From Chrysemys picta bellii (Eukaryota), in assembly GCF_011386835.1 (NCBI RefSeq), contig NC_088810.1, positions 23,250,001 to 23,314,000 on the forward strand: a DNA stretch of 64,000 nucleotides. The letters are read 5' to 3'. The position numbers were made by a program, and so were the translations under genes. Positions 2,000 to 62,908 of the stretch are shown piece after piece (positions within the stretch are counted from its first letter, which is position 1; each line of letters opens with the position of its first letter). The notes under the pieces are model-generated. The model made no database searches. It had not been told where the DNA came from and worked only from the letters and a program-made list of their open reading frames with translations.

Positions 2000-4900
2000 C
2001 TGGTTTGGTCCTTTCCATTTATGTTGGTCATGGTTAGGGGCATTGGGCAGTGCATTTTGTACTCGGTAGGAAGGAGGGAGGCATTTTTGTACATTGGATC
2101 AGATCCAGTCCCCTTTGTAATCAATGGGATTCATACCATTGCCTTCAGTGTGTTTCTTCTCAGGACCTTATATCTGAAATTCCCCCTTTGGCAGGGGGAT
2201 AGCACGATGCCTATGGCCATTTTGAGTCCAACTTGAAACGTTGAAACTAGGACTCAGCAGGGACTGTAGTGGAGCATGGGCCTTTGTGATGGCCCTCTGC
2301 CAAGGGGAGAATTTCTCCTTACAGGGATTCAAAATTAACCTAAAATTGAACCTCCACTTTTGGCACCAATTGTAAACAATTATCAAAAGAAGATTAAAAA
2401 AAAATAGAATGAGCCTCTTTAGGAGTTACTTTCAGGGTTAGTGACAGATTTAGAAGCCATGATTGGTAAGTGTCCAGTAGGGTTCAAGAGATTGAGGTTA
2501 GTATTTGACATGAGTAGTCCTGATTATTGGGGGATATTTCTGACTCTGCCAATCTCTCCCTGTCTGACCTTGAACTTAACATGTCTCCGTTCACCTCTGA
2601 GTAAAACAGGTATAATTATAATTGGAAAGCTCTTCACAAACAATTTATACAGCCAAAGTTACGTACAGTATTATTATAGTAGTAATAATATTTATTGCAA
2701 TTAGACGTTCCAATATTCACTTTAGAAATGCATGTCAAGGTCATAGATGTCATTCCAGTACTCAGTTCATGATTCTGAGCTCCCTCCCGCTAAAATGGAG
2801 GCTCTTTGAGTTTTTTTGAATGTAGCATTTTACCCCTTTTAGATATATTTTAAAGTTAAAGGGCCTGAATGTGAGCTAGTGTTGACCAGCACAACTCCTT
2901 CAACTTCAATGTGAAGAAAGGCACTTTACCCAGCCCAGGTTAGAGAAAACCTTGTGTGGGGTGTATCTTGCTGTGTATACTGTGTACCTCCACCGCCAAC
3001 TGTGTAAGTCAAATGAGACTTACCAAGTTCACCAAGACGAATAATGCTAGATAAATGATCTGAAAAGGTCTACGTTGCAGGTGCTTTCATATGATTTAGA
3101 AAGTACGTGAGATACTGTTTACTTCTGGTGAGGACATTATTCGCTACAAAACCAATCTTGTTGCATGCATAACAACTTCAATGGATGTAAATGCTTTCCT
3201 CATTGTTTGTGATTAATAGTGTAAAGCTACACTAAATATACACTACACTAAAAAAATATAGAATGAGCCTCTCTAAGAGTTTCTTTCAGGGTTAGTGTCA
3301 GATTTGGAAGCCATGATTGGTAAGTGTCCAGTAGGGTTCAAGAGATTGAGGTTAGTGTTAGGCATGAGTAGTCCCAACTATTGGGCGCTTTTTCTGATTT
3401 TGTCAATCATGCCCTGTTTGACCTTGACCTTAACATACCTCCATTCACCTCTGTGTAAAACAGGTATAATTATAATTTGAAAGCACTTCACAAATATTTT
3501 ATACGGCCAAAGAGACGTACTGTATTATTATAGTAGTAATAACTGTTTTACTGCAATTAGATGGTCCAATATTCATTTTAAAAATGTATGTTAAGGTCTC
3601 AGATGTCATTCCAGTACTCCGTTTGCCATTCTGAGCTCCCTCCCCCTCAAAGGAAGGATCTTTGATTTTTTTGAATGTAGCTTTGTTTTCTCTTGTTTGA
3701 AGGAAGGCACTTTACCCAGCCCAGGTTAGAGAAAACCTTGTGTGGGGTGTATCTTGCTGTGTATACTGCGTACCTCCACCGCCAACTGTGTAAATCAAAT
3801 CAGACTTACCAAGTTCACCAAGACGAATAACGCTAGATAAATGATCTGAAAAGGTCTACGTTGCAGGTGCTTTCATATGATTTAGAAAGTACGTGAGATA
3901 CTGTTTACTTCTGGTGAGGACATTATTCGATACAAAACCAATCTTGTTGCATGCATAACAACTTCAATGGATGTAAATGCTTTCCTCATTGTTTGTGATT
4001 ATTAGTGTAAAGCTACAATTAATGAAATTTTAATATGAAAATTATGAGGCTGTATATCATGGGAATCTGAAGAAAGAATCCAGTTTGGGCCTTTCAATTT
4101 CTGCTGGTCATGGTTAGGGGCATTGGGCAGTGCATTTTGTACCCGGTAGGAAGGAGGGAGGCATTTTTGTACATTGGGTCAGATCCAGTCCCCTTTGTAA
4201 TCAATGGGATTCATACCATTGCCTTCAGTGTGTTTCTTCTCAGGACCTTATATCTGAAATTCCCCCTTTGGCAGGGGGATAGTACGATGCCTATGGCCAT
4301 TTTGAGTCCAACTTGAAACGTTGAAACTAGGACTCAGCAGGGACTGTAGTGGAGCATGGGCCTTTGTGATGGCCCTCTGCCAAGGGGAGAATTTCTTCTT
4401 ACAGGGATTCAAAATTAACCTAAAATTGGACCTCCACTTGTGGCACCAATTATAAACAATTATCAAAGGAAGATTAAAAAAAAATAGAATGAGTCTGTTT
4501 AAGAGTTACTTTCAGGGTTAGTGACAGATTTGGAAGGCATGATTGGTAAGTGTCCAGGAGGGTTCAAGAGATTGAGGTTAGTATTTGGCATGACTAGTCC
4601 CAACTATTGGGGGCTTTTTTTGACTTTGTCAATCATGCCCTGTCTGACCTTGAACTTAATATGTCTCCGTTCACCTCTGAGTAAAACAGGTATAATTATA
4701 ATTGGAAAGCTCTTCACAAACAATTTATACAGCCAAAGTTACGTACAGTATTATTATAGTAGTAATAACTTTTTATTGCAATTAGACGTTCCAATATTCA
4801 CTTTAGAAATGCATGTCAAGGTCATAGATGTCATTCCAGTACTCGGTGCATGATTCTGAGCTCCCTCCCGCTAAAATGGAGGCTCTTTAAGTTTTTTTGA

Positions 4901-5212
4901 ATGTAGCATTTTTTCCCCTTCTAGATATATTTTAAAGTTGAAGGGCCTTAATGTGAGCTAGTGTTGACCAGCACAACTCCTTCAACTTCAATTTGAAGGA
5001 AGGCAATTTACCCAGCCCAGGGTAGAGAAAACCTTGTGTGGGGTGTATCTTTCTGTGTATACTCCGTACCTCCACTCCCAACTGTGTAAGTCAAATCAGA
5101 CTTACCAAGTTCACCAAGACGAATAATGCGAGATAAATGATCTGAAAAGTTCTAAGTTGCAGGTGCTTTCATATCATTTAGAAAGTACGTGAGATACTCT
5201 TTACTTCTGGTA
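2000..5212. repeat. Tandem array of ~1.3-kb unit X (three units, one internally deleted)
   Basis: Recurrent blocks seen as repeated MTDLEAMIGK/MGLS/MIIVYNW shadow ORFs; deletion junction ~3240. Confidence 0.8.
3024..3091 (-). promoter_or_regulatory. Relic CBP TATA/exon-1/donor module, class R (representative of 15)
   Basis: Minus strand TATGAAAG ...TCTTGGTGAACTTG|GTAAGT, exactly 68 nt as in functional genes. Other copies: 3810-3877, 5106-5173, 7974-8041, 9262-9329, 14277-14344, 16873-16940, 18159-18226, 23274-23341, 24494-24561, 32700-32767, 33907-33974, 52335-52402, 62415-62482 (all -) and 48231-48298 (+). Confidence 0.65.
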
Positions 5213-5604
5213 CTTCTACCGAGTACAAAATGCACTGCCCAATGCCCCTAACCATGACCAGCATAAATGGAAAGGACCAAACCAGATTCCTGTTCATGAG
5301 AGACAGTTGTACTACTGACACAGCTCTGAATCACCTTGACATGCATTCTCATGCCAGCACCAAGTCAGTCAGTGGAATGACACGAGGATTGCACTTGGCT
5401 TGTACAATTTTTAGATGAAAGAAAGCTGAAGAATGCAACAATGTCACACCCTTTCAGGCTGAGATTAGCCCAACAATTCCAAACCCTGAGGAAAACAGCT
5501 CCATCCAAAGGAGGATTTAGCAAGGCAGTCAAGTTTGTTTGGTAACTAATTGGGACCGCCTCCATAAAAGGCATCTCAGATCCTTCAGGCAGTCCTACAA
5601 ACTG

Positions 5605-5672
5605 TATAAAAGTGCTCACATCTCAGGACTCTTCTAAACACTTCTCTGCACTTCATCTCTTCGGTGAACACG
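5605..5672 (+). promoter_or_regulatory. Gene 2 TATA box and exon 1
   Basis: TATAAAAG 5605-5612; donor GTAAGT at 5673. Confidence 0.85.
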
Positions 5673-6335
5673 GTAAGTCCATTTCGACTCCATCTCTTTC
5701 TTACCATAGAGATATCCTAGTAGCTTCCATTTCCTTTCAAGATTGAATCTTGCACTTACTCTCAGTGACTTTCATCAGGGATGAGGGTGTTATTCCATAA
5801 TTACATTGTGCACTTATTCAGTTGCAAGGGCTGGTGAATTCACGATGCTAAGCTAACGGGGGGATTGTAGAAGCAACATATGGAACTGGGAAATATATTT
5901 TCTATTAATTGGAAGTTGAATTAGGGTATTTAAATCTTTTAAGTGACCTTATAAAATCCTTTAGTCATTTCCCTTTTCGGTAGATTAGGAAGAAGCGTTC
6001 CCAGTTCACTCCATAACGGGGCAGTACATTGGTCTTCTACTTTATTCTGAAGAAGCTATTATTCATCACTGTTGCAGACATGGAGAGGACTTCAAAGGGG
6101 CCAGTTGGGAGGGAAGTTTAGTGGGAGAGGAGAAGAGGCGAAGAAAGCGGAAATAGGAACAAATAATAACCATGTACATAGGGACTGTGTCTACTCCTCC
6201 TCCTCTCTCTCGGGGCCCTTGTAGACCTCACCATAATAGTAACTGAGCTTTGAAGCCTTTCTTCCACTGACACTTATAACTTCTCTTGAATCTGTTCCCT
6301 GTTGTGTGTTTCAGGTTTATCTCCATCACAGAAAG

Positions 6336-6896
6336 ATGTCTTGCTCCAGCCTGTCCTATCCAGAATGCGGGGTGGCCCGTCCCAGTCCAGTTTCTGGCAG
6401 TTGCAATGAGCCGTGCATCAGGCAGTGCCCTGACTCTGAAGTGGTCATCAGACCATCACCGGTTGTCGTGACCCTCCCAGGACCAATTCTCAGCACTTTC
6501 CCGCAGCAGAGTGAAGTGGCAGCCGTAGGAGCACCTGTGGTCGGAGCTGGCTATGGGGGCTCATTCGGTTTGGGGGGATTGTATGGTTCTGGAGGCCGTT
6601 ATGGAGGATTGTATGGTTTAGGGGGATTTGGTGGTTATGGGGGCCTTTACGGTTATGGGGGATTGGGTGGTTATGGGGGATTGTGTGGTTACGGGGGAGG
6701 TTACGGTTATGGGGGATTAGGTGGTTATGGGGGATTGGGTAGATATGGGGGATTGTGTGGTTACGGGGGAGGTTATGGGGGATTGTGTGGTTACGGGGGA
6801 GGTTACGGTTATGGGGGATTAGGTGGTTATGGGGGATTATGCGGTTACGGGGGATATGGCCGTAGGTATCGCGGTGGATACTGTGGGCCATGTTAA
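6336..6896 (+). CDS. Corneous beta-protein gene 2, 186 aa
   Basis: Same core (CIRQ variant) and Gly/Tyr tail; intron 5673-6314, GT-AG. Confidence 0.95.
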
Positions 6897-6917
6897 TCCC
6901 AACAGGAATATCCATGA

Positions 6918-7138
6918 AATAAAGTAGAATAGGCCCTACATGTTCTATCCTTTCCACCGATATGTATCGTAAGCATCTCACTTTGAATTATGCTACGGCA
7001 GATATGTAATGGAGAACCTGCCTAGTCCTCTGCCTCTATTATGCTGTATTTTATTTCCTACCAACTGGTGTAAAACAAGGTTCTGCTCTGTATTGTTTCT
7101 TCCTGTAACTTTGTACTGCAAATTTCATTTACATTAAA
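6918..7138 (+). terminator. Candidate tandem polyadenylation signals (gene 2 shown; paralogous in the others)
   Basis: AATAAA 6918-6923 shortly after the stop; ATTAAA 7133-7138 followed by a GT/T-rich stretch. Confidence 0.55.
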
Positions 7139-7199
7139 AACAATGTTGCATCATCAGATCAGTCTTATGGTTCTCCTTGTTTCTCCCTATTCGGTTAAA

Positions 7200-9525
7200 A
7201 ATTCATCTGAAATTCCCCCTTTGGCAGAGGGATAGTATGATGCCTATGGACATTTTGAGTCCAACTTGAAAGATTCAAACTAGGATTCATCAGGGACTGT
7301 AGTTTAGGACGGGTCTTTGTGCTGACCCTCTGCAAAGGGGAGAATTTCTCCTTACAGGGATTCAAAATTAACCTAAAATTGGACCTCCACTTGTGGCACC
7401 AATTCTAAACAATTATCAAAGAAGATTAAAAAATAAAATGAGCCTCTCTAAGAGGGTTAGTGACAGATTTGGAAGCCATGATTGGTAAGTGTCCAGTAGG
7501 GTTCAAGAGATTGAAGTTAGTGTTAGGCATGAGTAGTCCCAACTATTGGGGGCTTTTTCTGATTTTGTCAATCATGCCCTGTCTGACCTTGACCTTAATA
7601 TGTCTCCATTCACCTCTGTGTAAAACAGGTATAATTATAATTTGAAAGCACTTCACAAACATTTTATAGGGCCAAAGAGACGTACTGTATTATTATAGTA
7701 GTAATAACTTTTTACTGCAATTAGATGGTCCAATATTCACTTTAAAAATTTATGTTAAGGTCTCTGATGTCATTCCAGTACTCCGTTTGCCATTCTGACC
7801 TCCCTCCCCATCAAAGGAAGGATCTTTGAATTTTTTGAATGTAGCTTTGTTTTCTCTTGTTTGAAGGAAGGCACTTTACCCAACCTAGGTTAGAGAAAAC
7901 CTTTTGTGGAGTGTATCTTTCTGTGCATACACTGCACCTCCACCCCCAACTGTGTGAGTGAAATAAGACTTACCAACTTCACCAAGACAAATAACGCTAG
8001 ATAAGTGATCTGAAAAGTTCTAAGTTGCAGGTGCTTTCATATGATTTAGAAAGGATGTGAGATGCACTTTACTTCAGGCGAAGACATTTTTCGCTACAAA
8101 ACCAATCTTGTTGAATGCATAACAACTTCAATGGATGTAAATGCTTTCCTCATTGTTTGTGATTGTTAGTGTAAAGCTACAATTATTGAAAATTTAATAT
8201 GAAAATTATGAGGCTGTATATTATGGGAATTTAAGAAGGAATCCAGTTTGGGCCTTTCAGTTTATGCTGGTCATGGTTGGGGCATTGGGCAGTGCATTTT
8301 GTACCCGGTAGAAAGGAGGGAGGCATTTTTGTGCACTGGGTCAGATCCAGTTCCCTTTGTAATCAATGGGAATCATTCTATTGCCTTCAGGACCTTATAT
8401 CTGAAATACCCCCTTTGGCAGGGGGATAGTAAGAAGCCTGTGGACAGTTTGAGTCCAACTTGAAACGTTCAAACTAGGACTCAGCAAGGACTGTAGTGGA
8501 GCATGGGCCTGTTTGATGGTCCTCTGCCCAGGGGACAATTTCTCCTTACAGGGATTCAAAATTGATCTAAAATTGGACCTTCACTTGTGGCACCAATTGT
8601 AAACAATTATCAAATGAAAATTAAAAAAAAATAGAATGAGACTCTCTAAGAGTTACTTTCAGGGTTAGTGACAGATTTGGAAGCCATGACTGCTAAGTGT
8701 CCGGTAGGGTTCAAGAGATTGAGGTTAGTGTTTGGCAGGAGTAGTCCCAACTATTGGGGGCTATTTCTGACTCTACCAATCTCTCCCTGTGTGACCTTGA
8801 CCTTGATCTTAACATGCCTCCGTTCACCTCTGTGTAAAACAGGTATAATTATAATTTTAAAGCACTTCACAAACACTTTATATGGCCAAAGAGACGTAGT
8901 GAATTATTATAGTACAGTAGTAATAACTTTTTACTGAAATTAGATGTTCCAAAATTCACTTTAAAAATGCATGTCAAGGTCTCAGAGGTCATTCAAGTAC
9001 TTCGTTCGCCATTCTGAGCTCCCTCCCCCTCAAATGGAGGCTCTTTGATTTTTTTGAATGTAGCTTTGTTTTCCCTTGTTTATATATTTTAAAGTTAAGG
9101 GATTGAATGTGAGCTAGTGTAGACCAACACAACTCCATCATCTTCAGTTTGAAGGAAGGCACTTTACCCAGCCCAGGTTAGAGAAAACCTTGTGTGGAGT
9201 GTATCTTTCCGTGTATACTCTGTACCTCCACTGCCAACTCTGTGAGTCAAATCAGACTTACCAAGTTCACCAAGATGAATAACGCTACATAATTGATCTG
9301 GTAAGTTCTAAGTTGCAGGTGCTTTCATATGATTTAGAAAGGATGTGAAATGCCCTTTTCTTCTGATGAGGACCTTATTAGCTACGAAACCAATCTTGTT
9401 GCATTCATAACAACTTCAATGGATGTAAATGTTTTCCTCATTGTTTGTGATTATTAGTGTAAAGCTATCACTGATGAAATTTTAATACCCAAATTATGAG
9501 GCTGTATATTATGGCCTGAGTAGGG
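7200..9525. repeat. Unit X tandem pair
   Basis: Two units; duplicated at 16097-18425 (offset ~8897). Confidence 0.8.
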
Positions 9526-12932: not shown

Positions 12933-14501
12933 CAGTTTGTAGGACTGCCTGAAGGATCTGAGATGCCTTTTATGGAGGCGGTCCCAATTAGTTACCAAAC
13001 AAACTTGACTGCCTTGCTAAATCCTCCTTTTGATGGAGCTGTTTTCCTCAGGGTTTGGGATTGTTGGGCTAATCTCAGCCTGAAAGTGTGTGACATTGTT
13101 GCATTCTTCAGCTTTCTTTCATCTAAAAATTGTACAAGCCAAGTGCAATCCTTGTGTCATTCCATTGACTGACTTGGTGCTGCCATGAGAATGCATGTCA
13201 AGCTGATTCAGAGCTGTGTCAGTAGTACAACTGTCTGTCATGAACAGGAATCTGGTTTGGTCCTTTCCATTTCTGCTGGTCATGGTTAGGGGCATTGGGC
13301 AGTGCATTTTGTACCCGGTAGGAAGGAGGGAGGCATTTTTGTACATTGGATCAGATCCAGTCCCCTTTGTAATCAATGGGATTCATACCATTGCCTTCAG
13401 TGTGTTTCTTCTCAGGACCTTATATCTGAAATTCCCCCTTTGGCAGGGGGATAGTACGATGCCTATGGCCATTTTGAGTCCAACTTGAAACGTTGAAACT
13501 AGGACTCAGCAGGGACTGTAGTGGAGCATGGGCCTTTGTGATGGCCCTCTGCCAAGGGGAGAATTTCTTCTTACAGGGATTCAAAATTAACCTAAAATTG
13601 GACCTCCACTTGTGGCACCAATTATAAACAATTATCAAAGGAAGATTAAAAAAAATAGAATGAGCCTGTTTAAGAGTTACTTTCAGGGTTAGTGACAGAT
13701 TTGGAAGGCATGATTGGTAAGTGTCCAGGAGGGTTCAAGAGATTGAGGTTAGTATTTGGCATGACTAGTCCCAACTATTGGGGGCTTTTTCTGACTTTGT
13801 CAATCATGCCCTGTCTGACCTTGAACTTAGTATGTCTCCGTTCACCTCTGAGTAAAACAGGTATAATTATAATTGGAAAGCTCTTCACAAACAATTTATA
13901 CAGCCAAAGTTACGTACAGTATTATTATAGTAGTAATAACTTTTTATTGCAATTAGACGTTCCAATATTCACTTTAGAAATGCATGTCAAGGTCATAGAT
14001 GTCATTCCAGTACTCGGTGCATGATTCTGAGCTCCCTCCCGCTAAAATGGAGGCTCTTTAAGTTTTTTTGAATGTAGCATTTTTTCCCCTTCTAGATATA
14101 TTTTAAAGTTGAAGGGCCTTAATGTGAGCTAGTGTTGACCAGCACAACTCCTTCAACTTCAATTTGAAGGAAGGCACTTTACCCAGCCCAGGGTAGAGAA
14201 AACCTTGTGTGGGGTGTATCTTTCTGTGTATACTCCGTACCTCCACTCCCAACTGTGTAAGTCAAATCAGACTTACCAAGTTCACCAAGACGAATAATGC
14301 TAGATAAATGATCTGAAAAGGTCTAAGTTGCAGGTGCTTTCATATGATTTAGAAAGTACGTGAGACTCAACAATCCCAAACCCTGAGGAAAACAGCTCCA
14401 TCCAAAGGAGGGTTTAGCAAGGCAGTCAAGTTTGTTTGGTAACTAATTGGGACCGCCTCCATAAAAGGCATCTCAGATCCTTCAGGCAGTCCTACAAACT
14501 G

Positions 14502-15793: not shown

Positions 15794-18700
15794 TCCCAAC
15801 AGGAATATCCATGAAATAAAGTAGAATAGGCCCTACATGTTCTATCCTTTCCACCGATATGTATCGTAAGCATCTCACTTTGAATTATGCTACGGCAGAT
15901 ATGTAATGGAGAACCTGCCTAGTCCTCTGCCTCTATTATGCTGTATTTTATTTCCTACCAACTGGTGTAAAACAAGGTTCTGCTCTGTATTGTTTCTTCC
16001 TGTAACTTTGTACTGCAAATTTCATTCACATTAAAAACTATGTTGCATCATCAGATCAGTCTTATGGTTCTCCTTGTTTCTCCCTATTCGGTTAAAAATT
16101 CATCTGAAATTCCCCCTTTGGCAGAGGGATAGTATGATGCCTATGGACATTTTGAGTCCAACTTGAAAGATTCAAACTAGGATTCATCAGGGACTGTAGT
16201 TTAGCACGGGTCTTTGTGCTGACCCTCTGCAAAGGGGAGAATTTCTCCTTACAGGGATTCAAAATTAACCTAAAATTGGACCTCCACTTGTGGCACCAAT
16301 TCTAAACAATTATCAAAAGAAGATTAAAAAATAAAATGAGCCTCTCTAAGAGGGTTAGTGACAGATTTGGAAGCCATGATTGGTAAGTGTCCAGTAGGGT
16401 TCAAGGGATTGAAGTTAGTGTTAGGCATGAGTAGTCCCAACTATTGGGGGCTTTTTCTGATTTTGTCAATCATGCCCTGTCTGACCTTGACCTTAACATA
16501 CCTCCGTTCACCTATGTGTAAAACAGGTATAATTATAATTTGAAAGCACTTCACAAACATTTTATAGGGCCAAAGAGACGTACTGTATTATTATAGTAGT
16601 AATAACTTTTTTACTGCAATTAGATGGTCCAATATTCACTTTAAAAATTTATGTTAAGGTCTCTGATGTCATTCCAGTACTCCGTTTGCCATTCTGACCT
16701 CCCTCCCCATCAAAGGAAGGATCTTTGAATTTTTTGAATGTAGCTTTGTTTTCTCTTGTTTGAAGGAAGGCACTTTACCCAACCTAGGTTAGAGAAAACC
16801 TTTTGTGGAGTGTATCTTTCTGTGTATACACTGCACCTCCACCCCCAACTGTGTGAGTGAAATAAGACTTACCAACTTCACCAAGACAAATAACGCTAGA
16901 TAAGTGATCTGAAAAGTTCTAAGTTGCAGGTGCTTTCATATGATTTAGAAAGGATGTGAGATGCACTTTACTTCAGGCGAAGACATTTCGCTACAAAACC
17001 AATCTTGTTGAATGCATAACAACTTCAATGGATGTAAATGCTTTCCTCATTGTTTGTGATTGTTAGTGTAAAGCTACAATTATTGAAAATTTAATATGAA
17101 AATTATGAGGCTGTATATTATGGGAATTTAAGAAGGAATCCAGTTTGGGCCTTTCAGTTTATGCTGGTCATGGTTGGGGCATTGGGCAGTGCATTTTGTA
17201 CCCGGTAGAAAGGAGGGAGGCATTTTTGTGCACTGGGTCAGATCCAGTTCCCTTTGTAATCAATGGGAATCATTCTATTGCCTTCAGGACCTTATATCTG
17301 AAATACCCCCTTTGGCAGGGGGATAGTAAGAAGCCTGTGGACAGTTTGAGTCCAACTTGAAACGTTCAAACTAGGACTCAGCAAGGACTGTAGTGGAGCA
17401 TGGGCCTGTTTGATGGTCCTCTGCCCAGGGGACAATTTCTCCTTACAGGGATTCAAAATTGATCTAAAATTGGACCTTCACTTGTGGCACCAATTGTAAA
17501 CAATTATCAAATGAAAATTAAAAAAAAATAGAATGAGACTCTCTAAGAGTTACTTTCAGGGTTAGTGACAGATTTGGAAGCCATGACTGCTAAGTGTCCG
17601 GTAGGGTTCAAGAGATTGAGGTTAGTGTTTGGCAGGAGTAGTCCCAACTATTGGGGGCTATTTCTGACTCTACCAATCTCTCCCTGTGTGACCTTGACCT
17701 TGATCTTAACATGCCTCCGTTCACCTCTGTGTAAAACAGGTATAATTATAATTTTAAAGCACTTCACAAACACTTTATATGGCCAAAGAGACGTAGTGAA
17801 TTATTATAGTACAGTAGTAATAACTTTTTACTGAAATTAGATGTTCCAAAATTCACTTTAAAAATGCATGTCAAGGTCTCAGAGGTCATTCAAGTACTTC
17901 GTTCGCCATTCTGAGCTCCCTCCCCCTCAAATAGAGGCTCTTTGATTTTTTTGAATGTAGCTTTGTTTTCCCTTGTTTATATATTTTAAAGTTAAGGGAT
18001 TGAATGTGAGCTAGTGTAGACCAACACAACTCCATCATCTTCAGTTTGAAGGAAGGCACTTTACCCAGCCCAGGTTAGAGAAAACCTTGTGTGGAGTGTA
18101 TCTTTCCGTGTATACTCTGTACCTCCACTGCCAACTCTGTGAGTCAAATCAGACTTACCAAGTTCACCAAGATGAATAACGCTACATAATTGATCTGGTA
18201 AGTTCTAAGTTGCAGGTGCTTTCATATGATTTAGAAAGGATGTGAAATGCCCTTTTCTTCTGATGAGGACCTTATTAGCTACGAAACCAATCTTGTTGCA
18301 TTCATAACAACTTCAATGGATGTAAATGTTTTCCTCATTGTTTGTGATTATTAGTGTAAAGCTATCACTGATGAAATTTTAATACCCAAATTATGAGGCT
18401 GTATATTATGGCCTGAGTAGGGAGGGACATGAGAGACCTTGCTGTGCCTTTTGTGTTATCCAATCAAAAATTTGATTATTGGAAAATATTCATCTTCTGG
18501 GAGCTGAAGGGCACAAAAATGTTGACGACATGTGTAGATGAAAATGTAGTTTTTAATTTGCAGTTCCTGCAATATCATGCCCTGATAGACCCTGGGGATA
18601 TGATATATATGGAGTGTAGTGAGCAACAGCAACCTCAAAAGCCTTTAGACTCTTGTACTACATTAAGTTGTGGAGTTAAAGTTGAGAAGAGCTTTCTAGT

Positions 18701-22249: not shown

Positions 22250-24770
22250 TGGTTTGGTCCTTTCCATTTATGCTGGTCATGGTTAGGGGCATTGGGCAGT
22301 GCATTTTGTACTCGGTAGGAAGGAGGGAGGCATTTTTGTACATTGGATCAGATCCAGTCCCCTTTGTAATCAATGGGATTCATACCATTGCCTTCAGTGT
22401 GTTTCTTTTCAGGACCTTATATCTGAAATTCCCCCTTTGGCAAGGGGATAGCACGATGCCTATGGCCATTTTGAGTCCAACTTGAAACGTTGAAACTAGG
22501 ACTCAGCAGGGACTGTAGTGGAGCATGGGCCTTTGTGATGGCCCTCTGCCAAGGGGAGAATTTCTCCTTACAGGGATTCAAAATAAACCTAAAATTGGAC
22601 CTCCACTTTTGGCACCAATTGTAAACAATTATCAAAGGAAGATTAAAAAAACACAGAATGAGCCTCTTTAAGAGTTAAATTCAGGGTTAGTGACAGATTT
22701 GGAAGGCATGATTGTAAGTGTCCAGGAGGGTTCAAGAGATTGAGGTTAGTATTTGGCATGACTAGTCCCAACTATTGGGGGCTTTTTCTGACTTTGTCAA
22801 TCATGCCCTGTCTGACCTTGAACTTAACATGTCTCCGTTCACCTCTGTGTAAAACAGGTATAATTATAATTGGAAAGCTCTTCACAAACACTTTATACAG
22901 CCAAAGTTACGTACAGTATTATTATAGTAGTAATAATTTTTATTGCAATTAGACGTTCCAATATTCACTTTAGAAATGCATGTCAAGGTCATAGATGTCA
23001 TTCCAGTACTTGGTACATGATTCTGAGCTCCCTCCCGCTAAAATGGAGGCTCTGTGAGTTTTTTTTGAATGTAGCATTTTTTCCCCTTCTAGATATATTT
23101 TAAAGTTGAAGGGCCTGTATGTGAGCTAGTGTTGACCAGCACAACTCCTTCAACTTCAATGTGAAGGAAGGCACTTTACCCAGCCCAGGTTAAAGAAAAC
23201 CTTGTGTGGGTTGTATCTTGCTGTGTATACTCCATACCTCCACCGCCAACTGTGTAAGTCAAATCAGACTTACCAAGTTCACCAAGACGAATAATGCTGG
23301 ATAAATGATCTGAAAAGGTCTAAGTTGCAGGTGCTTTCATATGATTTAGAAAGTACGTGAGATACTGTTTACTTCTGGTGAGGACATTATTCGCTACAAA
23401 ACCAATCTTGTTGCATGCATAACAACTTCAATGGATGTAAATGCTTTCCTCATTGTTTGTGATTATTAGTGTAAAGCTACAATTAATGAAATTTTAATAT
23501 GAAAATTATGAGGCTGTATATCATGGGAATCTGAAGAAGGAATCCAGTTTGGGCCTTTCAATTTATGCTGGTCATGGTTGGGGCATTGGGCAGTTCATTT
23601 TGTACCCGGTAGGAAGGAGGGAGGCATTTTTGTGCACTGGGTCAGATCCAGTTCCCTTTGTAATCAATGGGAATCACTCTGCTGCCTTCAGGACCTTATA
23701 TCTGAACTTCCCCCTTTGGCAGGTGGATAGTACGATGCCTATGGACATTTTGAGTCCAACTTGAAAGATTCAAACTAGGATTCATCAGGGACTGTAGTTT
23801 AGCACGTGTCTTTGTGCTGACCCTCTGCAAAGGGGAGAATCTCTCCTAGCAGGGATTCAAAATTAACCTAAAATTGGACCTCCACTTGTGGCACCAATTC
23901 TAAACAATTATCAAAAGAAGATTAAAAAAAAATAGAATGAGCCTCTTTAAGAGTTTCTTTCAGGGTTAGTGACAGATTTGGAAGCCATGATTGGTAAGTG
24001 TCCAGTAGGGTTCAAGAGACTGAGGTTAGTGTTTGGCATGAGTAGTCCCAATTATTGGGGGATATTTCTGACTCTACCAATCTCTCCCTGCCTAACCTTG
24101 ACCTTGATCTTAACAAGTCTCCGTTCACCTCTGTGTAAAACAGGTATAATTATAATTTGAAAGCACTTCACAAACACTTTATACGGCCAAAGAGACGTAC
24201 TGAATTATTAAAGTACAGTAGTAATAACTTTTTCCTGAAATTAGATGTTCCAATATTCACTTTAAAAATGCATGTCAAGGTCTCAGATGTCATTCCAGTA
24301 CTCCGTTCATCATTCTGAGCTCCCTCCCTCTCAAAGGAAGGATCTTTGATTTTTTTGAATGTAGCTTTGTTTTCTCTTGTTTGAAGGAAGGCACTTTACC
24401 CAACCTAGGTTGGAGAAAACCTTGTGTGGAGTATATCTTTCTGTGCATACACTGCACCTCCACCCCCAACTGTGTGAGTGAAATCAGACTTACCAAGTTC
24501 ACCAAGACGAATATTGCTAGCTAAGTGATCTGAAAAATTCTAAGTTACAGGTGCTTTCATATGATTTAGAAAGGACGTGAGATGACCTTTTCTTCTGACT
24601 AGGACCTTATTAGCTACGAAACCAATCTTATTGCATTCATAACAACTTCAATGGATGTAAATGTTTTCCTCATTCTTTGTGATCATTAGTGTAAAGCTAC
24701 AATTAATGAAATTTTAATACAAAAATTATGAGGCTGTATATCATGGCCTGAGTAGGGAGGGACATGAGAT
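22250..24770. repeat. Unit X tandem pair
   Basis: Period ~1295 nt; duplicated at ~31675-34185 (offset ~9425). Further single or partial units near 13250, 44660, 48035 (inverted), 52190, 57770, 58500 (inverted), 62200. Confidence 0.8.
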
Positions 24771-31354: not shown

Positions 31355-34300
31355 CAGTTTGTAGGACTGCCTGAAGGATCTGAGATTCCTTTTATGGAGG
31401 CGGTCCCAATTAGTTACCAAACAAACTTGACTGTCTTGCTAAATCCTCCTTTTGATGGAGCTGTTTTCCTCAGGGTTTGGGATTGTTGGGCTAATCTCAG
31501 CCTGAAAGGGTGTGACATTGTTGCATTCTTCAGCTTTCTTTCATCTAAAAATTGTACAAGCCAACTGCAATCCTCGTGTCATTCCATTGACTGACTTGGT
31601 GCTGCCATGAGAATGCATGTCAAGCTGATTCAGAGCTGTGTCAGTAGTGCAACTGAATGTCATGAACAGGAATCTGGTTTGGTCCTTTCCATTTATGCTG
31701 GTCATGGTTAGGGGCATTGGGCAGTGCATTTTGTACCCGGTAGGAAGGAGGGAGGCATTTTTGTACATTGGGTCAGATCCAGTCCCCTTTGTAATCAATG
31801 GGATTCATACCATTGCCTTCAGTGTGTTTCTTCTCAGGACCTTATATCTGAAATTCCCCCTTTGGCAGGGGGATAGTACGATGCCTATGGCCATTTTGAG
31901 TCCAACTTGAAACGTTGAAACTAGGACTCAGCAGGGACTGTAGTGGAGCATGGGCCTTTGTGATGGCCCTCTGCCAAGGGGAGAATTTCTTCTTACAGGG
32001 ATACAAAATTAACCTAAAATTGGACCTCCACTTGTGGCACCAATTATAAACAATTATCAAAGGAAGATTAAAAAAAAATAGAATGAGCCTCTTTAAGAGT
32101 TACTTTCAGGGTTAGTGACAGATTTGGAAGGCATGATTGGTAAGTGTCCAGGAGGGTTCAAGAGATTGAGGTTAGTATTTGGCATGACTAGTCCCAACTA
32201 TTGGGGGCTTTTTCTGACTTTGTCAATCATGCCCTGTCTGACCTTGAACTTAATATGTCTCCGTTCACCTCTCAGTAAAACAGGTATAATTATAATTGGA
32301 AAGCTCTTCACAAACAATTTATACAGCCAAAGTTACGTACAGTATTATTATAGTAGTAATAACTTTTTATTGCAATTAGACGTTCCAATATTCACTTTAG
32401 AAATGCATGTCAAGGTCATAGATGTCATTCCAGTACGCGGTTCATGATTCTGAGCTCCCTCCCGCTAAAATGGAGGCTCTTTAAGTTTTTTTGAATGTAG
32501 CATTTTTTCCCCTTCTAGATATATTTTAAAGTTGAAGGGCCTTAATGTGAGCTAGTGTTGACCAGCACAACTCCTTCAACTTCAATTTGAAGGAAGGCAC
32601 TTTACCCAGCCCAGGGTAGAGAAAACCTTGTGTGGGGTGTATCTTTCTGTGTATACTCCGTACCTCCACTCCCAACTGTGTAAGTCAAATCAGACTTACC
32701 AAGTTCACCAAGACGAATAATGCTGGATAAATGATCTGAAAAGGTCTAAGTTGCAGGTGCTTTCATATGATTTAGAAAGTACGTGAGATACTGTTTACTT
32801 CTGGTGAGGACATTATTCGCTACAAAACCAATCTTGTTGAATGCATAACAACTTCAATGGATGTAAATGCTTTCCTCATTGTTTGTGATTATTAGTGTAA
32901 AGCTACAATTAATGAAATTTTAATATGAAAATTATGAGGCTGTATATCATGGGAATCTGAAGAAGGAATCCAGTTTGGGCCTTTCAATTTATGCTGGTCA
33001 TGGTTGGGGCATTGGGCAGTTCATTTTGTACCCGGTAGGAAGGAGGGAGGCATTTTTGTGCACTGGGTCAGATCCAGTTCCCTTTGTAATCAATGGGAAT
33101 CACTCTGCTGCCTTCAGGACCTTATATCTGAAATTCCCCCTTTGGCAGGGGGATAGTACGATGCCTATGGACATTTTGAGTCCAACTTGAAAGATTCAAA
33201 CTAGGATTCATCAGGGACTGTAGTTTAGCACGTGTCTTTGTGCTGACCCTCTGCAAAGGGGAGAATTTCTCCTAGCAGGGATTCAAAATTAACCTAAAAT
33301 TGGACCTCCACTTGTGGCACCAATTCTAAACAATTATCAAAAGGAGATTAAAAAAAATAGAATGAGCCTCTCTAAGAGTTTCTTTCAGGGTTAGTGACAG
33401 ATTTGGAAGCCATGATTGGTAAGTGTCCAGTAGGGTTCAAGAGATTGAGGTTAGTGTTAGGCATGAGTAGTCCCAACTATTGGGGGCTTTTTCTGATTTT
33501 GTCAATCATGTCCTGTCTGACCTTGACCTTAACATACCTCCGTTCACCTCTGTGTAAAACAGGTATAATTATAATTTGAAAGCACTTCACAAACATTTTA
33601 TACGGCCAAAGAGACGTACTGTATTATTATAGTAGTAATAACTTTTTTACTGAAATTAGATGGTCCAATATTCATTTTAAAAATGCATGTCAAGGTCTCA
33701 GATGTCATTCCAGTACTCCGTTCACCATTCTGAGCTACCACCACCTCAAAGGAAGGATCTTTGAGTTTTTTGAATGTAGCTTTGTTTTCCCTTGTTTGAA
33801 GGAAGGCTTTTACCCAACCTAGGTTAGAGAAAATCTTGTTTGGAGTGTATCTTTCTGTGCATACACTGCACCTCCACCCCAACTGTGTGAGTGAAATCAG
33901 ACTTACCAAGTTCACCAAGACGAATATTGCTAGCTATGTGATCTGAAAAATTCTAAGTTACAGGTGCTTTCATATGATTTAGAAAGGATGTGAGATGACC
34001 TTTTCTTCTGATGAGGACCTTATTAGCTACGAAACCAATCTTATTGAATGCATAACAACTTCGATGGATGTAAATGCTTTCCTCATTGTTTGTGATTATT
34101 AGTGTAAAGCTACAATTAATGAAATTTTAATACAAAAATTATGAGGCTGTATATCATGGCCTGAGTAGGGAGGGTCATGAGATAGCTTGCTGTGCCTTTT
34201 TTGAGGTGACTCAAGCACTCAGGATTGGGCGTCTAACACAAAGAGGACACCCTCAATATTATAATAATAAAACACTTTGCACTTATAAAAGAGTAATGAG

Positions 34301-47553: not shown

Positions 47554-49631
47554 CTTTCAGCTTGCAACACACAGCAATGAGTAGAGGACAGAAAAGGAAC
47601 AGTGACCAATGAAAGTAAACTTTCAAAGCCTATATTTTCCAAAAGGTATTTTTCCATCTCTTCCATCAACGGGATAATGGAAATTTCCATGCACCAGTCA
47701 ATTTGCTGAGGTTATAGTTAGGCTTTATTTTATAGCATATCTTGGAATTAATGGGCACTTTGTGTGTAATTCTTTAAGTGGATTCAGTGTATAATCTTCA
47801 CCTCAAAGTGCTTCTGTGCATCTGCATGCAAAACAGGGATAACAACAGTTACGCTACGTGCGAGGCTTCCTCGGGACTATGAATTTCAAGGCATTGCAAA
47901 AACACTCATTACTCTTTTATAAGTGCAAAGTGTTTTATTATTATAATATTGAGGGTGTCCTCTTTGTGTTAGACGCCCAGTCCTGAGTGCTTGAGTCACC
48001 CCAAAAAAGGCCCAGCAAGCTCTCTCATGTCCCTCCCTACTCAGGCCATGATATACAGCCTCATAATTTTCGTATTAATATTTCATTAATTGGAGCTTTA
48101 CACTAATGATCACAAACAATGAGGAAAACATTTACATCCATTGAAGTTGTTATGCATGCAACAAGATTGGTTTTGTAGCGAAAAATGTCTTCGCCAGAAG
48201 TAAAGAGCATCTCACATGCTTTCTAAATGATATGAGAGCACCTGCAACTTAGGACTTTTCAGATCACTTATCTAGCGTTATTCGTCTTGGTGAACTTGGT
48301 AAGTCTGATTTGACTCTCAGAGTTGGGGGTGGAGGAACGGAGTACACACAGAAAGACACACTCCACACAAGGTCTGGGCTGGGTAAAGTGCCTCCCTTCA
48401 AATTGAAGTTGAAGGAGTTGTGCTGGTTTACACTAGCTCACATTCAGGCCCTTTAACCTTAAAATATATAAACAAAGGGGGGAAAAAGCTACATTCAAAC
48501 AAAATCAAAGAGCCTCCATTTGAGGGGGAGGGAGCTCAGAATCATGAACCGAGTACTGGAATGACATCATGACCTTGACATGCATTTCTAAAGTGAATAT
48601 TGGAACGTCTAATTGCAATATAAAGTTATTAACTATAATAATACTGTACGTAACTTTGGCTGTATAAAGTGTTTGTGAAGAGCTTTCCAATTATAATTAT
48701 ACCTGTGTTACACAGAGGTGAACGGAGACATGTTAAGTTCAAGGTCAGACAGGGCATGACTGACAAAATCAGAAAAAGCTCGCAATAGTTGGGACTTCTC
48801 ATGCCAAACACTAACCTCAGTCTCTTGAATCCTACTGGACACTTACCAATCATGGCTTCCAAATCTGTCACTAACCCTGAAAGAAACTCTTAAAGAGGCT
48901 CATTCTATTTTTTTTAAATCTTCTTTTGATAATTGTTTACAATTGGTGCCACAAGTGAAGGTCCAATTTTAGGTTTATTTTGAATCCCTGTAAGGAGAAA
49001 TTCTCCCCTTGGCAGAGGGCCATCACAAACGCCCATGCTCCACTACAGTCCCTGCTGAGTCCTAGTTGGAACATTTCAAGTTGGACTCAAAATGTCCATA
49101 GGCATCGTACTATCCCCCTGCCAAAGGGGAAATTTCAGATATAAGGTCCTGAGAAGAAACACACTGAAGGCAATGGTATGAATCCCATTGATTACAAAGG
49201 GGACTGGATCTGACCCAATGTACAAAAATGCCTCCCTCTTACCTACCGGGTACAAAATGCACTGCCCAATGCCCCTAACAATGACCAGCATAAATGGAAA
49301 GGACCAAACCAGATTCCTGTTCATGACAGACAGTTGTACTACTGACACAGCTCGGAATCACCTTGACATGTATTCTCATTGCAGCACCAAGTCAGTCAGT
49401 GGAATGACACGAGGATTGCAGTTGGCTTGTACAATTTTTAGATGAAAGAAAGCTGAAGAATGCAACAATGTCACACCCTTTCAGGCTGAGATTAGCCCAA
49501 TAATCCCAAACCCTGAGGAAAAGAGCTCCATCAAAAGGAGGATTTAGCAAGGCAGTCAAGTTTATTTGGTAACTAATTAGGACCTCCTCCATAAAAGGCA
49601 TCTGAGATCCTTCAGGCAGTCCTACAAACTG

Positions 49632-50905: not shown

Positions 50906-52826
50906 TCCCAACAGGAATATCCATGAAATAAAGTAGAATAGGCCCTACATGTTCTATCCTTTCCACCGATATGTATCATAAGCATCTCACTTTGAATTAT
51001 GCTACGGCAGATATGTAATGGAGCACCTGCCTAGTCCTCTGCCTCTATTATGCTGTGTTTTATTTCCTACCAACTGGGGTAAAACAAGGAACTTAGAAAG
51101 GTTCTGCTCTGTATTGTTTCTTCCTGTAACTTTGTACTGCAAATTTCATTCGCATTAAAAACTATACTGCATCATCATATCAGTCTTATGGTTCTCCTTG
51201 TTTCTCCATATTGTCACTTAAAGAATGTACATTTTTCTTTGGTTTCATGGTAAGCATCGGTGTGACTGTTTGCAGGAGAAGGGCCCAGGTTTTCAGAAGG
51301 AAAAGAAAATTGGCCAGCAAATTGCTCGGTTAATGCATGGTTAAGTCTAGACCCGACCCCTTGAATGGCCGAGTATCTTTGGGGACAGGCTGCCTTTGCT
51401 TCTAGAGCTCTTTGAAGGTTTGGCTGTTCACTAGAAAGATCTTCTCAACTTTAAGTCCACAAGTAACCTCACTTTTCTATAGAGCTTCCTTTCCCCAGGA
51501 TTCGGGTTTTTCAGCAGAGATTATGGATAAAGACAAAGACTGGGAAAACTTTGTTGACATGTCCATTTGATATGGGTGCTTTATCTGGAGGCATTTGGCC
51601 AAACCAATCCCCATTTCCATGCCTAGCACTACTCTATGGGCTAAGGATGAATCCCTCCCCTTTGAGATACTCGAGGATGATAGCAATTTAAAGCTGCAGC
51701 ATTGAAGTCCTGAATGGCTGAGGAAGAAACCTTAACTCTGAGCAGTTAGCCTTTCACTGGCAATTCATAAGCTTCATTGAGAACAAATGCCCTAATATTG
51801 CCAGTCTTCCTCTTTGGTCAAATAATACGGAAGCCTTTCATGATATGCAAAGATAACGAATTGAGGAGAAATTAAAACCAGAAGACCAATAGTATAATGT
51901 ATTATATATTTGAATTTGAAATAAAGGAGAGTTGAAATTTTCAAAAGAAAGGAAAAGAAAAGAAAAGAAAACAAAAGAAAAGGCTATATATCCATGGTTT
52001 CACGAAGGCCATATCCTATCACCAGCTCCAAAGTAATGTATTTCTCAAATTGTCTTCTTTATTACAGCTGTAGAGTTTGACAAACAAGTCCGGTGTGCCA
52101 CCATTTTAAATTACTTGTTTCCCCTCGGTCAGTCTCAACTAAGGCAAAACACAATTGAGGTCATGTAGAGACCTAAAGAGAGAGCGAGAGTGTAGACCAA
52201 CATAACTCCATCATCTTCAATTTGAAGGAAGGCACTCTACCCAACCTAGGTTAGAGAAAACCTTGTGTGGAGTGTATCTTTCTGTGCATACACTGCACCT
52301 CCACCCCCAACTGTGTGAGTGAAATCAGACTTACCAAGTTCACCAAGACGAATAACGCTAGATAAGTGATCTGAAAAGTTCTAAGTTGCAGGTGCTTTCA
52401 TATGATTTAGAAAGGACGTGAGATGACCTTTTCTTCTGATGAGGACCTTATTAGCTACGAAACCAATCTTGTTGCATGCATAACAACTTCAATGGATGTA
52501 AATGTTTTCCTCATTGTTTGTGATTATTAGTGTAAAGCTATCATTAATGAAATTTTAATACAAAAATTATGAGGCTGTATATCATGGCCTGAGTAGGGAG
52601 GGACATGAGAGACCTTGCTGTGACTTTTTTGAGGTGACTCAAGCACTCAGCGTCTAACACAAAGAGAACACCCTCAATATTATCATAATAAAACACTTTG
52701 CACTTATAAAAGCGTAATGAGTGTTTTTGCAATGCCTTGAAATTCAAAGTTTACTTTCATTGGTCACTGTGCCTTTTCTGTCCTCTACTCATTGCTGTGT
52801 GTTGCAAGCTGTTCCGTTGCAGAAAG

Positions 52827-61919: not shown

Positions 61920-61989
61920 AAAAGAAAAGAAAAGAAAAGAAAAGAAAAGAAAAGAAAAGAAAAGAAAAGAAAAGAAAAGAAAAGAAAAG
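61920..61989. repeat. (AAAAG)14 microsatellite
   Basis: Direct count; interrupted ~8-unit paralogue at 51943-51982. Confidence 0.95.
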
Positions 61990-62350
61990 GCTATATATCC
62001 ATGGTTTCACGAAGGCCATATCCTATCACCAGCTCCAAAGTAATGTATTTCTCAAATTGTCTTCTTTATTGCAGCTGTAGAGTTTGACAAACAAGTCCGG
62101 TGTGCCACCATTTTAAATTACTTGTTTCCCCTCGGTCAGTCTCAAATAAGGCAAAACACAATTGAGGTAATGTAGAGACCTAAAGAGGGAGTGAGAGAGA
62201 GTGTAGACCAACATAACTCCATCATCTTCAGTTTGAAGGAAGGCACTCTACCCAACATAGGTTAGAGAAAACCTTGTGTGGAGTGTATCTTTCTGTGCAT
62301 ACACTGCACCTCCACCCCCAACTGTGTGAGTGAAATCAGACTTACCAAGT

Positions 62351-62388
62351 ATCAGAGGGGTAGCCGTGTTAGTCTGAATCTGTAAAAA
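62351..62388 (-). mobile_element. 38-bp Penelope-like 3' tip
   Basis: Reverse strand cagattcagactaacacggctacccctctgat resembles the tail at 40470-40500; absent from the paralogue at 52335. Confidence 0.7.
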
Positions 62389-62908
62389 GACTTACCAAGA
62401 CTTACCAGACTTACCATGTTCACCAAGACGAATAACGCTAGATAAGTGATCTGAAAAGTTCTAAGTTGCAGGTGCTTTCATATGATTTAGAAAGGACGTG
62501 AGATGACCTTTTCTTCTGATGAGGACCTTATTAGCTACGAAACCAATCTTGTTGCATGCATAACAACTTCAATGGATGTAAATGTTTTCCTCATTGTTTG
62601 TGATTATTAGTGTAAAGCTATCATTAATGAAATTTTAATACAAAAATTATGAGGCTGTATATCATGGCCTGAGTAGGGAGGGACATGAGAGACCTTGCTG
62701 TGACTTTTTTGAGGTGACTCAAGCACTCAGCGTCTAACACAAAGAGAACACCCTCAATATTATCATAATAAAACACTTTGCGCTTATAAAAGCGTAATGA
62801 GTGTTTTTGCAATGCCTTGAAATTCAAAGTTTACTTTCATTGGTCACTGTGCCTTTTCCGTCCTCTACTATTTGCTGTGTGTTGCAAGCTGACTTCCGTT
62901 GCAGAAAG

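What the first reader, a model, noticed from the sequence alone, without database searches (positions are those of the whole stretch)
2000..62482. Fifteen hidden beta-keratin TATA/exon-1/donor relics amplified inside a 1.3-kb tandem unit
Seen: each complete X unit has TATGAAAG followed by ...TCTTGGTGAACTTG|GTAAGT. The spacing is exactly the 68 nt of the ten functional TATAAAAG...TTCGGTGAACACG|GTAAGT modules; I checked it for all 15 copies. I found no CBP coding exon inside the unit. Inference: the apparent junk spacer is an amplified headless CBP gene front end. It sits between and next to the genes, so it could act as alternative first exons, eRNA/enhancer-like promoters or factor decoys. With the P modules, orphan front ends (21) outnumber intact genes (10).
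Basis: partly seen in the sequence, partly recalled or inferred. Interest (0 to 1): 0.72.

Follow-up and report, generated by a model that had tools for sequence, protein, structure and literature searches.

The report
Orphan beta-keratin gene front ends
A turtle scale-protein (beta-keratin) gene cluster carries fifteen copies of a diverged gene front end (promoter, first exon and splice donor) with no coding exon behind it; they change as fast as the DNA around them, so they are most likely dead leftovers of gene duplication and not hidden switches.

Summary
There are 15 X modules: 14 with TATGAAAG and one with TATGAGAG. Each has a GTAAGT donor exactly 68 nt after the first T of the TATA box, the same spacing as in the 10 intact corneous beta-protein (CBP) genes.

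The homology inference also holds. X aligns colinearly with the functional promoter and exon 1 over about 230 nt (-150 to +80), at 62% identity and far above shuffled controls. Homology stops about 10 nt past the donor. No CBP coding relic lies inside the unit.

The functional ideas (alternative first exons, eRNA promoters, decoys) have no support:
- In five colinear duplicons the X module varies as much as its spacer (0.105 vs 0.103 variable sites per position). The functional exon 1 and the coding sequence vary less than half as much.
- All copies share a G at TATA position 4.
- Six of the 15 point into the 3' end of an opposite-strand gene.
- In a related turtle's RNA contigs, which do show the normal exon 1-exon 2 splice, nothing lies on X.

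The RNA evidence is thin: contigs only, and no skin run of this species. Most likely these are neutral 5'-end pseudogene fragments carried along by tandem and segmental duplication.

The parts
3012..3238 (-). X module (TATA T at 3091, last exon base 3024), 1411 nt upstream of and co-oriented with the intact gene whose TATA is at 1680
3798..4026 (-). X module (TATA 3877, last exon base 3810), second in the array, partial unit
5094..5211 (-). X module (TATA 5173). Its upstream homology is cut at about -40 by an inverted-duplication junction
7962..8190 (-). X module (TATA 8041; donor context GAAGTTG). It points into the 3' end of the + strand gene at 6336-6896
9249..9478 (-). X module (TATA 9329), convergent with the neighbouring gene
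14265..14365 (-). X module (TATA 14344). Its upstream is cut at about -25 by a palindrome junction. It lies 1412 nt upstream of the gene with TATA at 12932
16861..17087 (-). X module (TATA 16940; GAAGTTG), convergent with the neighbouring gene
18146..18375 (-). X module (TATA 18226), convergent with the neighbouring gene
23261..23490 (-). X module (TATA 23341), 1412 nt upstream of the gene with TATA at 21929
24482..24710 (-). X module (TATA 24561), the last of its array, head-to-head with the CBP exon-2 relic at 25253
32688..32916 (-). X module (TATA 32767), 1413 nt upstream of the gene with TATA at 31354
33894..34123 (-). X module (TATA 33974), head-to-head with the exon-2 relic at 34689
48082..48311 (+). 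X module on the + strand (TATGAGAG at 48231). It is a single copy between the exon-2 relic at 47517 (-) and the intact gene with TATA at 49632 (+)
52322..52551 (-). X module (TATA 52402). Only unit positions 1-214 follow it. It is convergent with the neighbouring gene and head-to-head with the relic at 52866
62405..62631 (-). X module (TATA 62482; GAACATG). A 69-nt insertion (GGTAAGTCT repeats plus a retroelement-like tail) sits at the donor
3878..5173 (-). One complete 1296-nt X unit. Positions 1-74 are TATA, exon 1 and donor. Positions 75-1098 are the spacer S, which has no CBP homology. Positions 1112-1296 are the X proximal promoter of the next copy
407..1832 (-). Reference intact CBP gene. 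The promoter module is 1601-1832 with TATA at 1680. Exon 1 ends at 1613, the intron is 971-1612, exon 2 starts at 970, and the ORF runs to 407 (PF02422)
   Evidence: (joint 968/1611, cut +2)

Best explanation
The X modules are 5'-end pseudogene fragments. They carry the proximal promoter, the non-coding exon 1 and the splice donor of an old, diverged paralogue of the corneous beta-protein (beta-keratin) genes, and that paralogue has lost its coding exon. One such fragment, together with about 1.1 kb of unrelated spacer, lay about 1.4 kb upstream of an intact gene. It was duplicated in tandem once or twice (1.2-1.3 kb period). It was then carried passively to 15 copies by the 3-9 kb direct and inverted segmental duplications that built this cluster. 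The copies now drift neutrally. The intact-looking TATA-like box and GTAAGT donor reflect the youth of the copies and not selection. Shown: homology, extent, copy structure, absence of a coding exon, and equal variability of module and spacer. Inferred: neutrality or non-function, and the order of events.
For: Homology:
- Local alignment of X against the functional promoter scores 34, against 12.8 +/- 1.6 for shuffles, and spans about -135 to +75.
- The multiple alignments A1 and A2 are colinear over about 230 nt. Identity is 62% overall. It is 66% from TATA to donor, with no gaps there.
- A profile search finds exactly 10 F, 15 X and 6 P modules, with E-values from 1e-17 to 1e-76.

No tail:
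- tblastn with the CBP protein finds nothing inside the units.
- The 1 kb after the X donor shows no similarity to the functional intron, exon 2 or 3' flank (scores 14-15 against shuffles around 13).

No constraint:
- Across 13-15 copies the module is as variable as the rest of the unit (0.28 vs 0.25 variable sites per position). The exon body is above average. The well-kept donor 15-mer is matched by 13% of all 15-nt windows of the unit.
- In five colinear 3-kb duplicons with a shared history, the X module has 0.105 variable sites per position and the spacer 0.103 (odds ratio 1.02, p 0.86). The figures for functional sequence are 0.041 for TATA to donor, 0.048 for the coding sequence, 0.024 for the acceptor, and 0.126 for the intron.

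Damage that predates amplification:
- All 15 copies share G at TATA position 4, and they share a 10-nt deletion just upstream, where F and P both keep TATAAAA and the 10 nt.

Position:
- Six of the 15 point into the 3' end of an opposite-strand gene.
- Two copies have lost their proximal promoter at inversion junctions, and one has an insertion at the donor.

RNA:
- Run X3 shows the canonical exon 1 to exon 2 joint, and summed contig depth in the hundreds on the functional gene. No contig lies on 2926-3300 in any of the four runs.
Against: - All 15 donors are still perfect GTAAGT, and 14 of 15 TATA-like boxes are identical. The constraint tests have low power: only about 8% diversity among copies, and 95 module positions in the duplicon test.
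- Nine copies are placed exactly as alternative upstream first exons would be.
- The block around the donor is somewhat better kept between X and F than the exon body is (77% vs 57%, p 0.09). X was therefore probably functional for some time after it split from F.
- The RNA evidence is assembled contigs from putative RNA runs of other turtles. Contigs drop rare isoforms, and no skin or shell run of this species was available.
Confidence: 0.7

Rival explanations
1. Weak alternative upstream promoters and first exons. In the nine copies that lie 1.4-3.5 kb upstream of an intact gene and share its orientation, transcription starts downstream of TATGAAAG. The strong X donor then splices to the exon-2 acceptor of the gene, which gives mRNAs with a different 5'UTR.
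For: The geometry fits a first exon: same strand, donor TTG|GTAAGT as strong as the functional ACG|GTAAGT, and 68-nt spacing inside the 60-90 nt range used to define CBP exon 1 (PMC4760078). Only one AATAAA lies on the path from X3091 to the acceptor. Run X3 shows that transcripts of the functional gene can begin upstream of its TATA box (contigs 1611-1928 joined to exon 2), so upstream initiation does occur at this locus in a relative.
Against: No contig lies on X in any run. The upstream-extended transcripts in X3 end in 33 letters that match neither X nor anything else in the window at up to 5 mismatches. There is no excess conservation of the module. The TATA variant with G at position 4 is, from general knowledge of TBP binding, expected to be weak. 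Six of the 15 copies cannot serve this way.
Confidence: 0.15
2. Enhancer-like or decoy elements. The retained keratinocyte factor-binding sites in the X proximal promoter bind factors and modulate the neighbouring genes, or titrate factors, without giving stable spliced RNA.
For: Blocks shared by F, X and P upstream of the TATA box are still present in all X copies that keep their upstream region. An example is AAAC..GAGGAAA, which has an ETS-like GGAA core. X copies sit next to most genes.
Against: The region -146 to -31 is no less variable than the unit average (0.25 vs 0.26). Two copies lost this region without an obvious effect on the neighbouring intact gene. There are no chromatin data. 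The conservation can be explained by the youth of the copies.
Confidence: 0.1
3. Chance resemblance: X is unrelated spacer DNA that happens to carry a TATA-like word and a GTAAGT at the right distance.
For: Short motifs such as TATGAAAG occur about 4 times by chance in 64 kb.
Against: The alignment with the functional module is colinear over about 230 nt, about 13 sd above shuffles. The nhmmer E-values are 1e-29 to 1e-76 for X. The profile was built from F and X themselves, but it also finds the independent third type P at 1e-17 to 1e-21.
Confidence: 0.01

Closest known systems
[quoted passage not shown]
   Same: The layout and spacing are the same (68 nt). X is demonstrably homologous to the module of the ten intact genes in the window. 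The donor is a strong GTAAGT.
   Different: No exon 2 follows. The TATA box is TATGAAAG or TATGAGAG in every copy. A 10-nt deletion lies just upstream of the box. There is no evidence of transcription.
Partial (5'-end) duplicate pseudogenes and gene fragments left in tandem gene clusters by off-register or truncated segmental duplication
   Same: X is a fragment of a gene family member. It is multiplied together with its flanks, evolves at the flank rate, and is interspersed with intact paralogues. The same scan found the mirror case in this genome, a promoterless coding copy (note s1-337934).
   Different: Here the fragment is much older than its amplification: about 38% divergence from the functional module, against about 8% among copies. 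It has become part of its own short tandem unit.
Alternative first exons driven by tandemly duplicated promoters (for example the variable first exons of clustered protocadherins or UGT1A)
   Same: Several co-oriented promoter-plus-first-exon units, each with its own donor, lie upstream of one common acceptor. This holds for nine of the 15 copies.
   Different: The first exons are non-coding. No splicing to the common acceptor was seen, there is no sequence constraint, and six copies face the wrong way.

Membership tests
CBP/beta-keratin gene 5' module (homology) | Significant colinear sequence similarity to the promoter and exon 1 of bona fide CBP genes | tested here: met
   62% identity over 221 aligned positions, about 13 sd above shuffles, nhmmer E <= 1e-29
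CBP/beta-keratin gene 5' module (homology) | [quoted passage not shown] | tested here: inconclusive
   The donor GTAAGT is at +69 in 15 of 15 copies. The box is TATGAAAG or TATGAGAG and never TATAAA, so it is a degenerate TATA whose activity is unknown
Intact CBP/beta-keratin gene | Exon 2 with an acceptor 10-30 nt before the ATG and a PF02422 core-box ORF downstream on the same strand | tested here: not met
   no coding relic or intron homology within the unit. The ten intact genes hit PF02422
Alternative first exon of the neighbouring CBP gene | Located upstream of the gene and on the same strand | tested here: inconclusive
   9 copies are co-oriented at 1.4-3.5 kb, and 6 are convergent with the neighbouring gene
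Alternative first exon of the neighbouring CBP gene | RNA that joins the X donor to the exon-2 acceptor | tested here: inconclusive
   no contig on X and no such joint in four runs. The canonical joint was seen in one run. The data are contigs only, from other organisms, so absence is weak
Alternative first exon of the neighbouring CBP gene | Purifying selection on TATA and donor relative to the flanks | tested here: not met
   module 0.105 vs spacer 0.103 variable sites per position. TATA plus donor have 2 of 17 positions variable against 4.4 expected (Poisson p about 0.19, worked by hand from the counts, not by a script)
Enhancer / eRNA promoter | Open chromatin, active histone marks, bidirectional unstable transcripts | not testable with these tools
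   No chromatin or nascent-RNA data were available

The most novel reading that the evidence does not exclude
The nine co-oriented X modules are low-level or stage-specific alternative promoters. Their first exons splice onto the coding exon of the adjacent shell beta-keratin gene. Tandem amplification of a promoter and exon-1 cassette would then tune the expression of individual genes in the cluster. A related point is that the real transcription units of these genes reach further upstream than the textbook TATA box and short exon 1, as the run X3 contigs hint.
Probability: 0.15. Interest if true: 0.5.

Novelty: new member of a known kind. Interest (0 to 1): 0.27.

Why it matters
For annotation: gene finders that define CBP exon 1 as a TATA box plus a donor at 60-90 nt will meet 21 false front ends in this 64 kb alone, against 10 real ones.

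For evolution: the window holds three anciently diverged types of the same promoter and exon-1 module (F, X, P), together with six exon-2 relics. The cluster therefore grew by repeated off-register, inverted and truncated duplications that scatter heads and tails of genes. The blocks still shared by all three module types mark candidate core elements of the CBP promoter.

If the copies were used as first exons, they would be a simple example of promoter-cassette amplification. Nothing here shows that they are.

Tried and rejected
These show no similarity to F or X and lie in what would be the intron of the exon-2 relics. The profile search showed that the real P modules have their TATA at 25630, 35029, 41056, 47179, 53205 and 63287.
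- I searched the window for the loose ends of the run X3 and X17 contigs. The 30-mer upstream of 1928 has no match at up to 5 errors. That call's output was flooded by a 10-mer I should not have included.
- Pfam scan of three spacer ORFs, at 1964-2233, 4521-4850 and 9532-9828: no family.
- Rfam scan of 1-10000: nothing.
- Earlier-findings look-ups by words and by sequence: nothing relevant.
- Literature: it gives the exon-1 definition but no description of orphan exon-1 relics.
- An 'inverted head' origin, in which X is the head of the exon-2 relic that always lies head-to-head with it, split off by an inversion or a palindrome-centre deletion in the intron. It fits the adjacency in 5 of 6 cases and the similar divergence from F. 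It cannot be tested without an outgroup, so I leave it as a hypothesis.
The window has no N.
Full report
**What the window is.** It holds ten intact genes for Gly-Tyr-rich corneous beta-proteins (beta-keratins). The ORFs are 186-220 residues from the MSCSS start (190-230 aa as the ORF listing reports them, from an upstream GTG). The ORF I scanned (6336-6893) hits Pfam PF02422 at E 2.5e-28. Earlier notes of this scan name the genome as painted turtle. I did not verify that independently. Each intact gene has a TATAAAAG box, a short non-coding exon 1 that ends ...GTGAACACG|GTAAGT 68 nt after the first T of the box, an intron of about 640 nt, and a coding exon 2. A contig of run X3 joins 968 to 1611 with 'cut +2'. 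This confirms that the intron of the first gene is 971-1612 on the minus strand.

**The observation.**
- All fifteen X modules exist. Fourteen are on the minus strand with exact TATGAAAG. One is on the plus strand at 48231 with TATGAGAG.
- Every one spans 74 nt from the TATA T to the end of GTAAGT, as in the functional genes.
Two have C>G and one has T>A a few bases before the donor.
- The period is 1296, 1288, 1286, 1220 and 1207 nt, but arrays are only two or three units long.
- The number fifteen comes mostly from larger direct and inverted segmental duplications of 3-9 kb at 92-98% identity.
- A tree of the modules shows four subtypes. The fifteen are therefore a few events copied many times. 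The identical spacing among them is simply inheritance.

**Homology with the functional front end.**
- A local alignment of X against the functional gene region scores 34, against 12.8 +/- 1.6 for shuffles. It runs from about -135 to the GTAAGTC of the donor.
- In the multiple alignment (A1) X and F are colinear over about 230 columns. Identity is 62% overall. It is 60% upstream of the box, with three indels covering 13 gap columns. It is 7 of 8 in the box, and 66% with no gap between box and donor.
- Homology ends about 10 nt after the donor. The next 1 kb of the unit (spacer S) shows nothing against the functional intron, exon 2 or 3' flank on either strand.
- tblastn with the CBP protein finds no coding relic inside the unit.
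The refutation test it named (failure to align beyond the donor motif) is passed on the upstream side.

**A third module type and the tails.**
- A profile built from F and X finds 31 real matches: 10 F, 15 X and six more at E 1e-17 to 1e-21.
Their TATAAAA starts at 25630+, 35029+, 41056+, 47179-, 53205+ and 63287+, and the donor follows at 67 nt (read for P25630; in the other copies the spacing was not counted, and alignment A2 gives P53205 two further gap columns). None has a coding exon behind it.
- F, X and P align with each other over the whole module (A2). They share blocks such as AAAC..GAGGAAA, TAT.AAA and (G/A)TGAA...GTAAGTC.
- F and P both keep TATAAAA and a 10-nt segment just upstream of the box that X lacks. 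The G at box position 4 and the 10-nt deletion therefore arose in the X lineage. All 15 copies share them, so they arose before the amplification.
- The window also holds six CBP exon-2 relics with an early stop, at 25253+, 34689+, 40714+, 47517-, 52866+ and 62948+. The one I scanned, at 25277-25432, hits PF02422 at 6e-9.
- In the copy examined (25253), the relic keeps the last about 60 nt of the intron and the acceptor, but no exon 1.
- Five of the six relics lie head-to-head with the outermost X of an array, and each is followed about 200 nt later by a P module.
- The repeating block of the cluster is thus: intact gene <- S <- X (<- S <- X) | exon-2 relic -> P ->.

- Across 13-15 copies, the module from -146 to +74 has 0.28 variable sites per position, against 0.25 for the rest of the unit.
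- The exon body (positions 31-59) is above average, at 0.38.
- The 15-nt donor window has one variable site. However, 13% of all 15-nt windows in the unit are as invariant (parsimony counts agree).
- TATA plus donor (17 positions) have two variable sites against 4.4 expected (Poisson p about 0.19, worked by hand from the counts, not by a script).
- The cleanest comparison uses five colinear 3-kb duplicons that each contain an X module, the spacer and an intact gene, and so share one history:

| Region | Variable sites per position |
|---|---|
| X module | 0.105 |
| Spacer S | 0.103 |
| Functional TATA to donor | 0.041 |
| Acceptor | 0.024 |
| Coding sequence | 0.048 |
| Intron | 0.126 |

- X versus spacer gives an odds ratio of 1.02 (p 0.86). 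X behaves like spacer or intron, and the functional exon 1 behaves like coding sequence.
- Power is limited: 95 module positions and about 8% diversity. The direction is nonetheless clear.
- Between X and F the donor block is somewhat better kept than the exon body (17/22 vs 25/44, p 0.09). This fits X having been a working first exon for a time after it diverged from F, and not a chance match.

**Position.** Nine X modules lie 1.4-3.5 kb upstream of an intact gene on the same strand. Six (8041, 9329, 16940, 18226, 52402, 62482) point into the 3' end of a gene on the other strand. X5173 and X14344 lost everything upstream of about -40 and about -25 at inversion junctions. X62482 has a 69-nt insertion at the donor.

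**RNA.**
- The single run search returned no holder on record as RNA. It returned seven small putative RNA runs of other organisms with 5-7% of the words, and runs of the probable source species with next to none.
- I laid window 300-3300 (3001 letters, within the operators' limit) on X1, X3, X6 and X17 at 85% likeness. All are Logan contigs.
- Exon 2 is covered in X1, X3 and X6. X17 has only a few low-depth, mostly low-identity contigs there.
- Only X3 covers exon 1 and shows the canonical joint.
- No contig lies on 2926-3300, which holds the X module and its promoter, in any run.
- Contigs drop rare forms and the organisms differ, so this argues only against abundant use.

**An unexpected result in run X3.** Contigs run from the functional donor upstream across the TATA box to 1928. 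Summed depths there are comparable to exon 2. They stop at an acceptor-like cag (1929-1928), followed by 33 letters that match nothing in the window at up to 5 errors and do not resemble X or P exon 1. In that relative, many transcripts of these genes therefore start upstream of the textbook promoter, but not at X.

**Conclusion.** The observation and the homology claim are confirmed. The most likely reading (about 0.7) is that X is the front end of an old CBP paralogue that lost its coding exon. It was already damaged in its TATA box, and was multiplied passively with its spacer and with the adjacent intact gene. Use of the nine co-oriented copies as minor alternative first exons (about 0.15), or as enhancer-like or decoy elements (about 0.1), is not excluded, but no result here supports it. 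How head and tail were separated is open. One option fits the constant head-to-head X/relic pairing and the palindrome scars reported nearby (note s1-312501): an inversion or a palindrome-centre deletion within the intron of one ancestral gene. This is a hypothesis only.

**Literature and limits.** The literature I could search defines CBP exon 1 exactly as TATA plus a donor at 60-90 nt (PMC4760078).

Noticed in passing
window 1611-2016 (- strand), upstream of the functional TATA at 1680: In run X3 (a related organism), contigs spliced to exon 2 continue upstream through the TATA box to 1928. Summed depth there is comparable to exon 2. They end at an acceptor-like cag (1929-1928), followed by 33 letters not found in the window. 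One contig also skips 1846-1926. Many transcripts of these genes may therefore start well upstream of the assumed promoter, possibly from another first exon.
   Followed up: partly
window 25503-25708+, 34902-35107+, 40927-41134+, 47101-47303-, 53077-53281+, 63159-63364+: Six P modules form a third, anciently diverged paralogue of the CBP promoter, exon 1 and donor. They have TATAAAA, and the donor follows at 67 nt (read for P25630 only). No coding exon lies behind any of them. Each lies about 200 nt downstream of a truncated CBP exon-2 relic.
   Followed up: partly
window 25253-25435+, 34689-34838+, 40714-40857+, 47368-47517-, 52866-53006+, 62948-63088+: Six CBP exon-2 relics. The copy at 25253 has an in-frame stop at codon 8, ends after the core box and hits PF02422; the ORF running into the 40714 copy ends at the same point. 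In the copy examined (25253) the last about 60 nt of the intron and the acceptor are kept, but there is no exon 1. Five of the six lie head-to-head with the outermost X module of an array, which may mean that head and tail of one old gene were separated by an inversion or a deletion.
   Followed up: partly
window 62334-62424 (- strand): X62482 carries a 69-nt insertion exactly at its donor. It consists of two and a half extra GGTAAGTCT repeats and a short tail (…CAGACTAACACGGCTACCCCTCTGATACTT), which looks like the 3' end of a retroelement (my recollection, not tested). The result is four GTAAGT in a row. A similar tail with two mismatches lies at 40478-40494.
   Followed up: partly
window 37498-39952 (- strand): Three adjoining ORFs of 311, 219 and 283 aa whose sequences look like the reverse-transcriptase and endonuclease parts of a LINE, by eye only; no family scan was run. 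They lie between two copies of the relic/P block, so this is probably an insertion that split a duplicon.
   Followed up: no
window 20537-21229 (- strand): One intact CBP gene is 34 residues longer than its sisters (230 vs 196 aa) because a 102-nt Gly-Tyr repeat unit is present 2.7 times (98% matches).
   Followed up: no
window 54087-54377: A GC-rich tandem repeat with a 153-nt period (1.9 copies) with long overlapping Pro/Gly/Arg-rich ORFs on both strands. It is unlike the rest of the AT-rich window.
   Followed up: no
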